A DNA stretch of 64,000 bases from Anthoceros angustus (taxonomy: Eukaryota > Plantae > Anthocerotophyta): contig MU008158.1 of assembly GCA_010909165.1 (NCBI GenBank), positions 494,581 to 558,580 of the forward strand, read 5' to 3'. Below, in pieces: positions 44,743 to 47,700 of the stretch; the stretch's first letter is position 1, and every line of letters begins with the position of its first letter. The notes below the pieces were generated by a model. It was given only the letters and a program-made list of their open reading frames with translations, did no database searches and was not told the DNA's origin. The translations under genes were made by a program, and so were the position numbers.

Positions 44743-47700
44743 ATGTCTATGGCAAGTGGTGATTGCACCCTTGCAGGGGCTTTAGGGAGCACGGAGGATG
44801 ATCTTATGCTTTTGACAGATGGGAAGGTAGCATGGGTGCCAGAAACTTCTTCGCTTAAGGTGAAGAATGAGGATCGGGACAAGAAGGAGAGGGAAAGAGA
44901 TGGTTGGAGCCCGAGTGCAACTTCATCCCTTCTTGATGCTTTTGGGGAGAAGTATGCAAAGGTACAAGGTGGTCATCTCCGGATAAAAGATTGGGAGGAG
45001 CTTACTAGTGCTGTCAATGCCCGTTGCAACGGAGAGCGATCTCCCAAAAGTGTAGATCAGTGTAAGAATAAGGTTGACTCCCTGAAGAAACGCTACAAGT
45101 TGGAAAGATCACGAAACAAAAGATCGGCATCCGGCAAGATCATCAGTGTCTGGCCTTGGTTTGAGAGGCTGGATGGTCTGATTGGTCATGTAGCACAAGG
45201 AAGCATGCTTGGACAGCAAGCTGCCAGTAGTGGCAGTGGTGCAGGCAGCAGGTTGAAGACTGCAGCGAGGTCCTCGCCAGACAGGGACAGGAAAAGAAGA
45301 AGGCATGAGACAGATCCCAAGCAAATTTCAAAGGCTCAGCTAAAAAAGGAGGTCAACTTAGTCAAGCAAGTGCCAGAGCAAGCCCACCTGAGACGAGCAA
45401 GTACAAAAACCTTCCTGTTTTCATTTAAGACGAGTGACAAGGAAGTCACCATGTATCTTTGAAGGTGGGTTACACACGTCATATTTCTCAGTTTCTGATT
45501 ATTGTGTTTTACAGGGACTTGACCAAGATGTCAGTGAATCAGAGGAGGAGCAAGATGATCGAGTAATGTGGGAGCTTTCAGCATTGACACCTCTTGATGG
45601 GCGCTATGCCAGCAAAGTGAAGAAGCTGAGGAAGATCTTCTGCGAGCATGGGCTTATATGCTACCGTGTATTTGTCGAGGTTCTATGTTATCCTGTTCTG
45701 TTCTGTTCTGAGTTGTCATGTTCTGTGGTTTTCCTTCCAATCTGTTGAATGGATGTCTCTCCCTCTGATGGACATCTCGTTGAGTGACAAGTATTTGGCT
45801 GTCATGGATTTTTGACAGTACAGTTGCTTATTTAGTTGCCAATTGCAGGTCCGGTGGCTCCAGATGCTTTCACAACTTCCTGAAATCAAGGAAGTGCCAG
45901 CATTCAGCTCAGAGGCGAGGTTGATTCTGGAAGAGACAATCTCTAGTTTCAGCGTTGAGAGTGCTCTTGCAGTGAAGAAGGTGGAGCGGATGATGAATCA
46001 TGATGTTAAGGCTGTGGAATATGTATTGAAAGAAAAATTCAAGGCCAATCCTGAGTTGTCGAAGGTAAGATATCTTAGCTGGCAATTCCACATTTCCTCA
46101 TTGTAGGCTCTTGTCCGTTGCTTAACCGTCTCTCCTCCTCCTTTTCTCAGGTGGTAGAGTTTGTACACTTTGCATGCACATCAGAGGACATCAATAACCT
46201 GGCACATGCATTGATGCTCAGAAATGCACTCCACACTATCATGCTTCCTGCTATGGACAGGGTCATTGCGGCAATACGGTCACTTGCACATGAATATGCA
46301 GGGATCCCAATGATTTCACGTTTGCATGGCCAGGTAAATCTCCTCTAGAGAAAACATTTCCAATGGCTGTACCTCAATATGAAGGAACGCGGTCCGATGC
46401 TTGTTTTGATATTATTGCAGATGTCGTCCCCAACAACTTTAGGGAAAGAGATGGCCAATTTCTGCTTCAGGTTACATGAGCAGCGTGAGGAAGTTGCCAA
46501 GGTGAAGATCAAAGGAAAAATGGCTGGAGCGGTTGGAAACTTCAACGCCCATGTTGTTGCTTATCCTGAAATCAACTGGGAGATAGTTGCTGAGGAGTTT
46601 GTTACGTCACTGGGCATCAGCTTCAATCCCTACACAACGCAGGTTGTCTGCTCACCCGCAACTATGTTAAGTCTTTCAAAGGCTCCAGCTTCTTCAGAGC
46701 GTACCATCTGAATGCTCTTCTGTTATCAGCAGCTGCTGTTGAAAATTAAAGATGCCTTCTCCGTGCAGATTGAACCACATGACTATATTTCACAGCTGTT
46801 CGACGACATATCACGCTTCAATACCATTTTGCTGAACTTCGACAGAGATGTTTGGGGATATGTATCTTTAGGTTACTTCCGACAGGTTGTCGTTGTCTAT
46901 TTCAGCATTGGCTGCCATGTCAGGTTCATCATCCCGCGATACTGACATCAGCTTTGACTTGGCAGCGACTGGTGCCTGGTGAGGTCGGAACCGCAGCCAT
47001 CTTGGCAAAGGCTAATCCTCTCGATTTTGAAAACAGCGAGGGTAACTTGGGGATGGCTAATGCGAACTTCCTGCATATGAGCTCGAAACTACCTGTTTCG
47101 CGCTGGCAGGTCTTGATTGATTTTTTGGACTTGACAGGGAGTGTGTAGTGAGCTGAGCGCCTTCAATGTCATTTCATTTCTGTCATTTGCAGCAACTTAC
47201 GAACAGAATTTGTGGGTGGGTTGTCCTTTCAGCGAGACTTGTCCGAATCCACAGTCCTCCGGTACATGGGTGTGGGTCTTGCTCAGTCATTGATTGCATA
47301 TGGAAGTACACTCAGAGGAGTGAGCAAACTGCAGGTCCTCCCCTTCACCTCCACCGCGAGTGTTAATTTTCCGTCTTGACGCTCTTTGTTCAGCCCTCTT
47401 AGCAAAGGTGATCCTTGCAGGTGGATGAATCGCGGATTCACGATGACTTGGCAACGTCATGGGAAGTTCTGGCAGAGCCGATTCAAATAGTAAGTTGTTA
47501 AGCTGTCTGCCGCCTATTCAGGCATGAAGGGGGACAGCATACAGACTAAGTTTAGGTGTGGCAAATATGTAGATGATGCAGAAGTATGGGATCGAAAGGC
47601 CGTGCGAAAAGCTGATGGAGCTCACGCGTGGTCAGGCAATCACGAAGGACAACATGCACCATCTGGTGCAGTCATTGAATCTGCCGCCTGAAGCCAAGGA

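What the first reader, a model, noticed from the sequence alone, without database searches (positions are those of the whole stretch)
46300..47280. Lyase domain has lost catalytic/succinyl-side residues but kept nucleotide-side motifs (pseudoenzyme signature)
Seen: the fumarate-lyase signature GSSTMPHKVNP reads [11 protein letters not shown] (46987-47019), and RTHGQ reads RLHGQ. DGRY, NHD, CTSED, TTQ, the catalytic His, K-x-N and RDLxxSTVLR are retained. Established: the SSxMP loop carries the catalytic base (E. coli PurB Ser295, here Thr, with the next Ser changed to Ala), and the Thr before the catalytic His contacts the succinyl/fumarate moiety. Inference: damage targeted to one half of the site in an otherwise conserved ORF suggests selection for binding (AMP/AICAR-like ligands) without turnover, rather than decay.
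Basis: partly seen in the sequence, partly recalled or inferred. Interest (0 to 1): 0.8.

Follow-up and report, generated by a model that had tools for sequence, protein, structure and literature searches.

The report
Dead adenylosuccinate lyase fused to trihelix
A land-plant (probably hornwort) gene carries an otherwise well-preserved copy of the purine enzyme adenylosuccinate lyase whose catalytic loop has been rewritten and whose chloroplast-targeting exon has been replaced by a DNA-binding (trihelix) exon, so it is most likely a non-catalytic binding or assembly module, not a decaying gene.

Summary
At 46987-47019 the universal lyase signature GSSTMPHKVNP reads [11 protein letters not shown], and RTHGQ reads RLHGQ. 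The residues that hold AMP in solved PurB structures are all kept.

- **Loop is unique.** All 385 canonical homologues collected here, from bacteria to angiosperms, keep the GSS-x-MPHK-x-NP loop.
- **Damage is concentrated.** The window changes 15 of 115 columns invariant in 239 canonical enzymes. Six of those fall in the 10 invariant loop columns (Fisher p = 3e-4). Canonical sequences change 0 (median).
- **The rest looks constrained.** There are 10 exons, all GT-AG and all phase 0. There is no stop and no indel against E. coli PurB residues 5-455. In five exons divergence from plant enzymes equals that among plant enzymes.
- **Origin.** Seven exon sizes are identical to those of a moss ADSL gene, so this is a DNA-level duplicate of the plant nuclear gene. 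The exon that encodes the N-terminal (transit-peptide) extension in the moss gene is replaced by a trihelix exon.

Uniform neutral decay is unlikely. No orthologue, transcript or same-genome canonical copy could be retrieved, so dN/dS, the age of the duplication and ligand binding remain untested. The "succinyl half lost" reading is overstated, because K301, N303, T122, S123 and H91 are kept. The scan has noted this only on this same stretch (sibling note on the fusion), not on other DNA.

The parts
44743..45351 (+). Exon A: N-terminal trihelix (Myb/SANT-like) DNA-binding exon with a basic KRRR cluster. The proposed donor is GAG|GTCAAC at 45351/45352. Without splicing the ORF runs on to a stop at 45460-45462.
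   Evidence: Pfam PF13837 Myb_DNA-bind_4, E 1.2e-14, residues 53-144. Atlas look-alikes are Myb_DNA-bind_4 clusters, several of them mainly Streptophyta. Donor candidates are listed.
45515..45679 (+). Exon B: acidic linker followed by the start of the lyase body, including DGRY (R15/Y16). An internal ATG at 45566 lies at the position of the bacterial start codon.
   Evidence: phmmer to PurB residues 5-40. The acceptor lies within one codon of the intron-1 acceptor of the moss ADSL gene.
45849..46064 (+). Exon C: PurB 41-112. N90-H91-D92 are kept; T88 and T89 are both Met.
46151..46333 (+). Exon D: PurB 113-173. CTSED is kept. It ends in SRLHGQ, with T170L next to the retained catalytic acid H171.
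   Evidence: Pfam Lyase_1, E 4e-13
46421..46642 (+). Exon E: PurB 174-247. P174M, A175S and T176S lie in the HGQ-P-A-T-P signature. GAVG and TTQ247 are kept.
46769..46885 (+). Exon F: PurB 248-286.
46966..47109 (+). Exon G: PurB 287-334. It carries the degenerate catalytic loop.
   Evidence: Divergence from plant enzymes is 2.45 times the plant-to-plant level, the highest of any exon.
46987..47019 (+). Degenerate signature loop [11 protein letters not shown] (canonical GSSTMPHKVNP). S295T, S296A, T297A, M298I, P299L, H300A and V302A; K301, N303 and P304 are kept.
47233..47334 (+). Exon H: PurB 335-368. [10 protein letters not shown], with S340 and R344 kept and T338S and D339E changed.
47421..47489 (+). 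Exon I: PurB 369-391.
47573..47767 (+). Exon J: C-terminal ASL_C domain and TGA stop. The invariant residues R394, Y402 and K406 are changed to Q, C and M.
   Evidence: Pfam PF08328 ASL_C, E 4.4e-12, 46.5 bits against a cut-off of 35

Best explanation
The locus 44743-47767 (+) is an intact 10-exon plant nuclear gene. Its lyase body is a DNA-level duplicate of the plant PurB-type adenylosuccinate lyase gene, in which the exon for the N-terminal (transit-peptide) extension has been replaced by a trihelix DNA-binding exon through the ancestral phase-0 intron 1.

The lyase body has lost the mobile Ser-Ser catalytic loop, including the proposed catalytic base Ser295, and Thr170. It is therefore very probably unable to cleave adenylosuccinate or SAICAR. 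The fold, the tetramer-forming helical core and the whole AMP/ribose-phosphate pocket have stayed as conserved as in working enzymes.

The most likely function is a non-catalytic C-terminal module of a non-plastid, probably nuclear, trihelix protein. It would tetramerise the DNA-binding domains and bind, without turning over, a purine nucleotide such as AMP, AICAR, adenylosuccinate or SAICAR.

- **Shown:** the sequence changes, the retained residues, the exon structure, and the uneven distribution of divergence.
- **Inferred:** loss of activity, the exon A-B splice, nuclear location, tetramerisation and ligand binding.
For: - **Loop and T170 changes:** mapped on E. coli PurB numbering.
- **Literature:** Ser295/Ser262 is the proposed base, His171/His141 the acid, Thr140 a proposed succinyl contact, and the AMP contacts are listed (PMC2917274).
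- **Uniqueness of the loop:** all 385 homologues keep the canonical loop. No AKANP-x-DFEN coding sequence was found in 185,579 prokaryote species genomes or in the JGI metagenome contigs.
- **Invariant columns:** 100 of 115 are kept. Six of 10 are changed in the loop against 9 of 105 elsewhere, p = 2.8e-4, about a ten-fold rate difference.
- **Gene integrity:** all exons are phase 0, all introns GT-AG, there is no stop, and the alignment to PurB 5-455 is gap-free.
- **Local excess only:** exons C, D, E, F and I diverge from ten plant/charophyte enzymes 1.03-1.13 times as much as those enzymes diverge from each other. The loop exon diverges 2.45 times as much.
- **Shared exon structure:** window exons D-J measure 183, 222, 117, 144, 102, 69 and 192 nt, identical to exons 3-9 of the Ceratodon ADSL gene. 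Exon B starts within one codon of that gene's exon 2.
- **Neutral simulations:** point substitution at the rate needed for the loop (d about 0.4) gives about 16 stops. At d = 0.03-0.05 the ORF still stays open only 6-13% of the time, and 8 or more substitutions in the 33-nt loop have p of about 1e-5 to 2e-4.
- **DNA-binding exon:** trihelix Pfam hit, E 1.2e-14.
Against: - No orthologue, transcript or predicted protein of this gene was found in any collection. Conservation across species, expression and the exon A-B junction are therefore unverified.
- No hornwort-like lineage appeared among the plant ADSLs retrieved (tree), so the age of the duplication is unknown.
- If the duplication is very recent, the low divergence of most exons says nothing about selection.
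- The excess substitutions on the window's branch fall at formerly invariant columns in 15 of about 36 cases. That is compatible with relaxed constraint.
- Three invariant C-terminal residues and S28, T89, A175 and D339 are also changed, and some of these could damage nucleotide binding.
- Thr at position 295 keeps a hydroxyl group.
Confidence: 0.45

Rival explanations
1. Scaffold only. The dead lyase body is kept purely as a stable tetramerisation module for the trihelix domain, replacing the C-terminal region of ordinary trihelix factors. The conserved nucleotide pocket is an evolutionary hangover or is needed only for folding.
For: The helical-core exons D-F are the best conserved (66-79% identity to the family consensus), with divergence ratios of 1.03-1.13. 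The active site of this family is built from three subunits of a tetramer (PMC2917274), so pocket residues overlap the oligomer interfaces.
Against: All phosphate, ribose and base contacts are kept: R15, Y16, N90-D92, H171, Q247, N309, S340 and R344. That is more than folding alone would be expected to demand, given that the neighbouring catalytic loop was free to change at 7 of 11 positions.
Confidence: 0.2
2. Young chimeric duplicate without function. A recent segmental duplicate of ADSL lost its first exon, landed next to or captured a trihelix exon, and is drifting. The ORF is still open only because little time has passed.
For: No protein or transcript like it was found in 5.8 billion clustered proteins or 1.84 billion representatives. 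Most exons show no excess divergence, as expected for a young copy. The changed fraction of non-loop invariant columns (8.6%) would match neutral d of about 0.04, at which 6-13% of simulated ORFs stay open.
Against: At d = 0.035-0.05, eight or more substitutions within the 33-nt loop have p of about 1e-5 to 2e-4. No template for a patch-type mutation exists in the window. No indel and no damaged splice site occurs in nine introns. The collections appear to lack hornwort data altogether: the window's ORFs are absent and no hornwort-like ADSL lineage appears in the tree. Absence there is therefore weak evidence.
Confidence: 0.2
3. Still an enzyme. The remodelled loop, with Thr295 as base or a different closing mechanism, supports lyase or related chemistry on a new substrate, as in other neofunctionalised members of the ADSL fold.
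For: The catalytic acid H171 is kept, along with K301, N303, E308 and Thr at 295, which retains a hydroxyl. PDB hits include trans-aconitate decarboxylase Tad1, a neofunctionalised relative of this fold. Core conservation is at canonical level.
Against: S295, S296, M298, P299 and H300 are invariant in all 239 full-length canonical sequences, and the loop is canonical in all 385 homologues. Seven of the 11 signature positions are replaced, five by Ala, Ile or Leu. T170 is replaced by Leu. The predicted product also lacks the N-terminal extension that the moss enzyme carries.
Confidence: 0.1

Closest known systems
Canonical PurB-type adenylosuccinate lyase (E. coli PurB, PDB 2ptr/2ptq; plant nuclear ADSL such as Ceratodon purpureus M758_7G162100, P0182)
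   Same: Gap-free alignment to PurB residues 5-455. Identity is 61-65.5% to plant, algal and gammaproteobacterial enzymes. Seven exon sizes and all intron phases are identical to the moss gene. Pfam Lyase_1 plus ASL_C. The AMP-contact residues and His171 are kept.
   Different: The signature loop is [11 protein letters not shown] instead of GSSTMPHKVNP, T170 is Leu, and 15 of 115 family-invariant columns are changed. The N-terminal extension exon of the moss gene is absent and a trihelix exon sits in its place.
Delta-1 crystallin of birds (inactive paralogue of argininosuccinate lyase, same fumarate-lyase superfamily; from my own knowledge, not tested here)
   Same: A member of the same superfamily that keeps the tetrameric fold but has lost catalysis and serves a non-enzymatic role.
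   Different: As I recall, delta-1 crystallin keeps the Ser-Ser signature loop and is inactive for other reasons. It is a structural lens protein and is not fused to a DNA-binding domain.
MocR/GabR/PdxR-type bacterial regulators (DNA-binding domain fused to an aminotransferase-fold domain; from my own knowledge, not tested here)
   Same: The same logic as the proposed mechanism: a DNA-binding domain joined to an oligomeric enzyme-fold domain that binds its ligand without normal turnover.
   Different: Unrelated folds (winged helix plus PLP fold type I) and bacterial. No homology to the gene described here.
Plant trihelix (Myb_DNA-bind_4) transcription factors
   Same: Exon A matches PF13837 at E 1.2e-14. 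Its Atlas look-alikes are Myb_DNA-bind_4 clusters, several mainly Streptophyta.
   Different: The region after the DNA-binding domain is an adenylosuccinate lyase body. No protein combining the two families appeared in any list here.

Membership tests
Fumarate-lyase superfamily fold (Pfam Lyase_1 PF00206 plus ASL_C PF08328) | Significant match to the family profiles | tested here: met
   Searched exon by exon. Exon D matches Lyase_1 at E 4e-13, 49.9 bits against a cut-off of 27. Exons E and F give weaker Lyase_1 matches, below the cut-off on their own. Exon J matches ASL_C at E 4.4e-12, 46.5 bits against a cut-off of 35. Every lyase exon searched against the PDB (B, C, D, E, G, H) has ADSL chains as its top hits.
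Catalytically competent adenylosuccinate lyase (EC 4.3.2.2) | Signature loop G-S-S-x-M-P-x-K-x-N with the catalytic Ser (E. coli Ser295) | tested here: not met
   The loop reads [11 protein letters not shown], with S295T, S296A, M298I, P299L and H300A. It is canonical in all 385 homologues.
Catalytically competent adenylosuccinate lyase (EC 4.3.2.2) | Catalytic acid His171 within S-R-T-H-G-Q | tested here: inconclusive
   His171 is kept, but the invariant T170 is Leu and the following P-A-T reads M-S-S.
Catalytically competent adenylosuccinate lyase (EC 4.3.2.2) | Nucleotide (AMP) contact residues | tested here: met
   R15, Y16, N90, H91, D92, T122, S123, Q247, N309, S340 and R344 are all present. 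Their roles are taken from PMC2917274.
Catalytically competent adenylosuccinate lyase (EC 4.3.2.2) | Cleavage of adenylosuccinate and SAICAR | not testable with these tools
   Needs an enzyme assay or complementation test.
Plant nuclear ADSL gene lineage | Shared intron positions and phases with a plant ADSL gene | tested here: met
   Exons D-J are identical in size (183, 222, 117, 144, 102, 69, 192 nt) and phase to exons 3-9 of the Ceratodon gene. B plus C total 381 nt against 378 nt, with one extra intron. The window matches bryophyte-specific residues at 22 diagnostic columns and tracheophyte-specific residues at 7.
Plant nuclear ADSL gene lineage | N-terminal extension (transit-peptide) exon | tested here: not met
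   The exon upstream of the conserved intron-1 acceptor encodes a trihelix domain. Otherwise only the internal ATG at 45566, with no N-terminal extension, is available.
Trihelix / Myb_DNA-bind_4 transcription factors | Match to PF13837 above its gathering score | tested here: met
   55 bits against a cut-off of 27, E 1.2e-14.
Pseudoenzyme (inactive homologue maintained by selection) | Loss of catalytic residues | tested here: met
Pseudoenzyme (inactive homologue maintained by selection) | Evidence of purifying selection or expression | tested here: inconclusive
   Indirect support comes from the intact ORF and splice sites, the absence of indels, and canonical-level conservation outside the loop. 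No orthologues or transcripts could be retrieved, so there is no dN/dS.

The most novel reading that the evidence does not exclude
A land-plant transcription factor that reads the state of purine biosynthesis directly. A nuclear trihelix DNA-binding domain would be coupled to a catalytically dead adenylosuccinate lyase tetramer that traps a pathway intermediate or product (SAICAR, adenylosuccinate, AICAR or AMP). This would be a eukaryotic counterpart of bacterial enzyme-fold regulators, and a non-catalytic sensor built on the adenylosuccinate lyase fold.
Probability: 0.22. Interest if true: 0.85.

Novelty: new variant of a known kind. Interest (0 to 1): 0.6.

Why it matters
Plants have no known transcription factor that senses purine intermediates directly. 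Pseudoenzymes derived from core purine-pathway enzymes are hardly described: literature searches for trihelix with adenylosuccinate lyase, and for adenylosuccinate lyase with pseudoenzyme, found nothing relevant.

If the gene is expressed and conserved among hornworts, it would be a clean natural example of exon shuffling. A targeting exon is swapped for a DNA-binding exon, which converts a metabolic enzyme into a regulatory module. The system is experimentally tractable: recombinant binding assays, DNA-binding assays with and without nucleotides, and knock-out in a transformable hornwort.

If it proves to be a species-specific young chimera, it is instead a snapshot of how such fusions arise, and of limited wider interest.

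Tried and rejected
**Searches that found no relative of this gene**
- Exhaustive representative search with the loop exon: 768 hits, and the 150 best listed all have canonical loops. No look-alike of the degenerate loop appeared.
- Word search with the ORF around the loop exon: only bacterial ADSL fragments.
- Exact look-up of eight window ORFs: none is in the collection, so this genome's ORFs are not held there.
- Profile searches built from exon rows aligned to a full-length homologue, one bacterial scaffold (A4) and one moss scaffold (A8). A window-like protein should have scored near the top, and none appeared. No listed protein combined trihelix and lyase families. MAFFT misplaced several short exon rows, so some exons had to be left out of these profiles (B, H, I and J from A8; H and I from A4).
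- Degenerate DNA pattern for AKANP-x-DFEN in prokaryote genomes and JGI metagenomes: no match.
- DNA pattern for MMNHDVKA in metagenomes: two chance matches, neither an ADSL.
- Earlier findings searched by sequence and by words: nothing beyond this same stretch.
- Literature searches for trihelix with adenylosuccinate lyase, adenylosuccinate lyase with pseudoenzyme, and hornwort with trihelix: nothing relevant.
- The Tsai et al. 2007 E. coli PurB paper is not held.

**Explanations considered and rejected**
- A compensated frameshift as the origin of the loop. I rejected this by reading the codons: the replacements look like point substitutions, K, N and P stay in frame, and the flanks are colinear.
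- A local template for a patch mutation: none in the window.
- A bacterial or horizontally transferred origin: rejected because the intron positions are shared with the moss gene.
- A retrocopy: rejected because nine introns are present.

All searches were exon by exon, by reference.
- For that reason no structure prediction, complex prediction or phylogenetic placement of the whole protein was attempted.
- The organism ("hornwort, Anthoceros") comes from other agents' notes. I could support it only indirectly, through the bryophyte-type residues.
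Full report
**1. What is at the coordinates**

The window is eukaryotic. The region 44743-47767 (+) reads as one gene of 10 exons, with nine short introns of 80-169 nt. All introns are GT-AG and all exon boundaries are phase 0.

| Exon | Coordinates |
|---|---|
| A | 44743-45351 |
| B | 45515-45679 |
| C | 45849-46064 |
| D | 46151-46333 |
| E | 46421-46642 |
| F | 46769-46885 |
| G | 46966-47109 |
| H | 47233-47334 |
| I | 47421-47489 |
| J | 47573-47767 (TGA stop) |

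- Exon A matches Pfam Myb_DNA-bind_4, the trihelix domain, at E 1.2e-14.
- Exons D, E and F match Lyase_1, and exon J matches ASL_C.
- phmmer of exons B, C, D, E, G and H against the PDB gives adenylosuccinate lyases as top hits. The alignments to E. coli PurB (2ptr/2ptq, native numbering) are gap-free.
- Exons F, I and J were placed by ungapped BLASTP alignment to the moss enzyme and by equal length between mapped neighbours. The body is then colinear with PurB residues 5-455 without an indel.

Everything was done exon by exon, by reference, and the per-column statistics were summed over exons.

**2. Check of the observation**

Changed residues, in E. coli numbering:
- In the signature loop: S295T, S296A, T297A, M298I, P299L, H300A, V302A and I305L.
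- Next to the catalytic acid: T170L.

Retained residues: R15/Y16 (DGRY), N90, H91, D92, C-T122-S123-E-D, H171, GAVG, Q247, E292, K301, N303, P304, E308, N309, R335, S340 and R344.

The literature supports the assigned roles. PMC2917274 names Ser262 (E. coli Ser295) as the proposed base and His141 (His171) as the acid. It lists the AMP contacts as Arg4, Tyr5, Arg67/Asp69, His141, Gln212, Asn276, Ser306 and Arg310; all of their E. coli equivalents are kept here. [quoted passage not shown] It places Lys268 (K301) 2.8 Å from a succinyl carboxylate.

The mobile loop and T170 are lost. K301, N303, T122, S123 and H91, which also face the succinyl/fumarate part, are kept.

**3. Is it more than chance?**

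I collected canonical homologues by three searches.

- All 385 sequences with a recognisable loop carry GSS[T/A/V][M/I]PHK[V/I]NP.
- In an alignment of 239 full-length canonical sequences (55 eukaryote-length, 184 bacterial), 115 columns are strictly invariant. The window differs at 15: S28C, T89M, T170L, A175S, S295T, S296A, M298I, P299L, H300A, V302A, I305L, D339E, R394Q, Y402C and K406M.
- Leaving out each canonical sequence in turn gives 0 such changes for 221 of 239, 1 for 15, 2 for 2, and 9 for one outlier.
- Six of the 10 invariant loop columns are changed against 9 of 105 elsewhere. That gives Fisher p = 2.8e-4 and about a ten-fold difference in rate.

**4. Origin of the lyase body**

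I fetched the genomic locus of the moss Ceratodon purpureus ADSL (P0182, locus L001) and solved its exon structure. It has nine phase-0 exons of 222, 378, 183, 222, 117, 144, 102, 69 and 192 nt.

- The window's exons D-J have exactly the sizes of moss exons 3-9.
- B plus C total 381 nt against the moss exon 2 of 378 nt. The window therefore has one extra intron there.
- Exon B begins within one codon of the start of moss exon 2.

The lyase body is thus a DNA-level duplicate of the plant nuclear ADSL gene. It is neither a retrocopy nor a bacterial transfer. Moss exon 1 encodes the N-terminal extension that the bacterial enzymes lack (presumably the plastid transit peptide); in the window it has been replaced by the trihelix exon, through the ancestral phase-0 intron.

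The acceptor at 45514/45515 follows a strong pyrimidine tract and therefore needs an upstream exon. The trihelix ORF ends in an in-frame donor, GAG|GTCAAC at 45351, which is no weaker than several other donors of this gene. The junction is not verified by transcripts. The alternative is a separate lyase product starting at the ATG at 45566. Either way the product lacks the N-terminal extension of the moss enzyme.

At columns that separate bryophyte from tracheophyte ADSLs, the window carries the bryophyte residue 22 times and the tracheophyte residue 7 times. Other agents' notes call this genome a hornwort, Anthoceros. I could not verify that independently.

**5. Decay or selection?**

Evidence against uniform decay:
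- There is no stop, no indel and no damaged splice site across about 1.4 kb of coding sequence and nine introns.
- Divergence is not spread evenly. Against ten plant/charophyte enzymes, exons C, D, E, F and I are 1.03-1.13 times as divergent as those enzymes are from each other, which means no excess at all.
- The excess sits in exon G (2.45 times, the loop), exon B (1.5), exon H (1.43) and exon J (1.28, the C-terminal domain).
- Neutral point-substitution simulations show that the rate needed for the loop (d about 0.4) would introduce about 16 stops. The rate that fits the other invariant columns (d about 0.03-0.05) leaves the ORF open in 6-13% of trials, but gives 8 or more substitutions in the 33-nt loop with p of about 1e-5 to 2e-4.
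- No local template for a one-step patch exists in the window. By my reading of the codons, the replacements are point changes rather than a frameshift.

The caveat is real. Tajima relative-rate tests show the window's branch is about twice as long as the moss branch (65 against 29 unique changes, p = 2e-4), though it is not significantly longer than the angiosperm branch. Of the roughly 36 excess changes, 15 hit invariant columns. That is what one expects if catalysis-related sites were released from constraint, but it is also compatible with general relaxation over a short time (p = 0.02 against a uniform spread).

Without the same-genome canonical ADSL or any orthologue, I cannot date the duplication or compute dN/dS.

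**6. Search for relatives**

No protein resembling the window's lyase was found by any route:
- among 1.84 billion representatives;
- by the word search with the loop ORF;
- by two profile searches in which the exons, each a separate row given by reference, were aligned to a bacterial or a moss scaffold.

A window-like protein should have scored close to the scaffold itself in those profile searches. Exact look-ups show that the window's ORFs are not in the collection. A tree of the plant hits contains mosses, liverworts, ferns, seed plants, streptophyte algae and chlorophytes, but no lineage that looks like a hornwort. The collections therefore probably lack hornwort data, and absence there says little. 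Degenerate DNA patterns for window-specific peptides found nothing relevant in prokaryote genomes or JGI metagenomes.

**7. Most likely mechanism**

- **Shown:** an intact gene whose lyase body keeps the fold and the AMP pocket, has lost the catalytic loop and T170, and has had its N-terminal extension exon replaced by a DNA-binding exon.
- **Inferred:** the protein cannot catalyse the beta-elimination, is not imported into plastids (where, from general knowledge, plant purine synthesis takes place), and acts in the nucleus. A basic KRRR cluster follows the trihelix domain. The tetrameric lyase body would assemble several DNA-binding domains and probably bind a purine nucleotide without turnover.

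I give this 0.45. A scaffold-only role gets 0.2, a young non-functional chimera 0.2, and a remodelled but active enzyme 0.1.

**8. Comparison with what is known**

- **Family.** It belongs to the fumarate-lyase fold and to the plant ADSL gene lineage. It fails the defining signature of a competent ADSL.
- **Function.** It resembles delta-1 crystallin, an inactive member of the same superfamily, and bacterial MocR/GabR regulators, in which a DNA-binding domain is fused to an enzyme fold used for ligand binding. Both comparisons rest on my own knowledge and were not tested here.
- **Literature.** No paper in the searchable library combines trihelix with adenylosuccinate lyase, or describes an ADSL pseudoenzyme.

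I classify it as a new variant of a known kind.

**9. Verdict**

Interest is 0.6. The pattern is striking and statistically solid. Whether the gene is expressed, conserved and able to bind a ligand can be decided with data and experiments that exist but were out of reach here.

Noticed in passing
window 30570-34181 (+): A single uninterrupted 1203-aa ORF encodes a complete SMC protein (SMC_N E 5e-68, SMC_hinge E 1.3e-27). An intron-free SMC gene stands out in a plant nuclear region where neighbouring genes have introns. It could be a retrocopy, an organelle- or bacterial-type SMC, or a transfer.
   Followed up: partly
window 18468-22187 (-) and 59931-63965 (-): Two very long intron-free pentatricopeptide-repeat ORFs (1239 and 1344 aa), each with a C-terminal E motif. 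These are RNA-editing-type PPR genes, which fits a bryophyte genome with heavy organelle RNA editing.
   Followed up: partly
window 48382-48454 (-): A tRNA-Arg (CCT) gene lies about 600 bp downstream of the stop codon of the fusion gene, on the opposite strand.
   Followed up: no
window 44723-44742 (+): Two short upstream ATGs (44723 and 44728) precede the presumed start codon at 44743, inside a CT-rich leader. They may be small upstream ORFs, or the true start may be the second Met at 44749.
   Followed up: no
window 1-6000: This stretch has unusually high G+C (0.59-0.63 against about 0.47 elsewhere) and strong positive GC skew (about +0.2). Many overlapping ORFs occur on both strands. I did not examine it.
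   Followed up: no
window 16038-17108 (-), 23024-25558 (+), 26936-28835 (+): The neighbours are ordinary plant genes: a pectinesterase, an F-box protein and pieces of a ubiquitin-activating E1. The fusion gene therefore lies in a gene-dense region rather than a transposon-rich one.
   Followed up: partly
protein P0085 (database hit, not in the window): This 462-aa bacterial-length ADSL changes 9 columns that are invariant in the other 238 canonical sequences, for example CTSYD in place of CTSED, yet keeps an intact Ser-Ser loop. It is a second unusual member of the family.
   Followed up: no
protein P0001 (database hit, not in the window): A 396-aa plant-like ADSL prediction in which the C-terminal part precedes the N-terminal part, and with several degraded motifs. 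It is probably a tandem or pseudogene artefact in some plant assembly.
   Followed up: no
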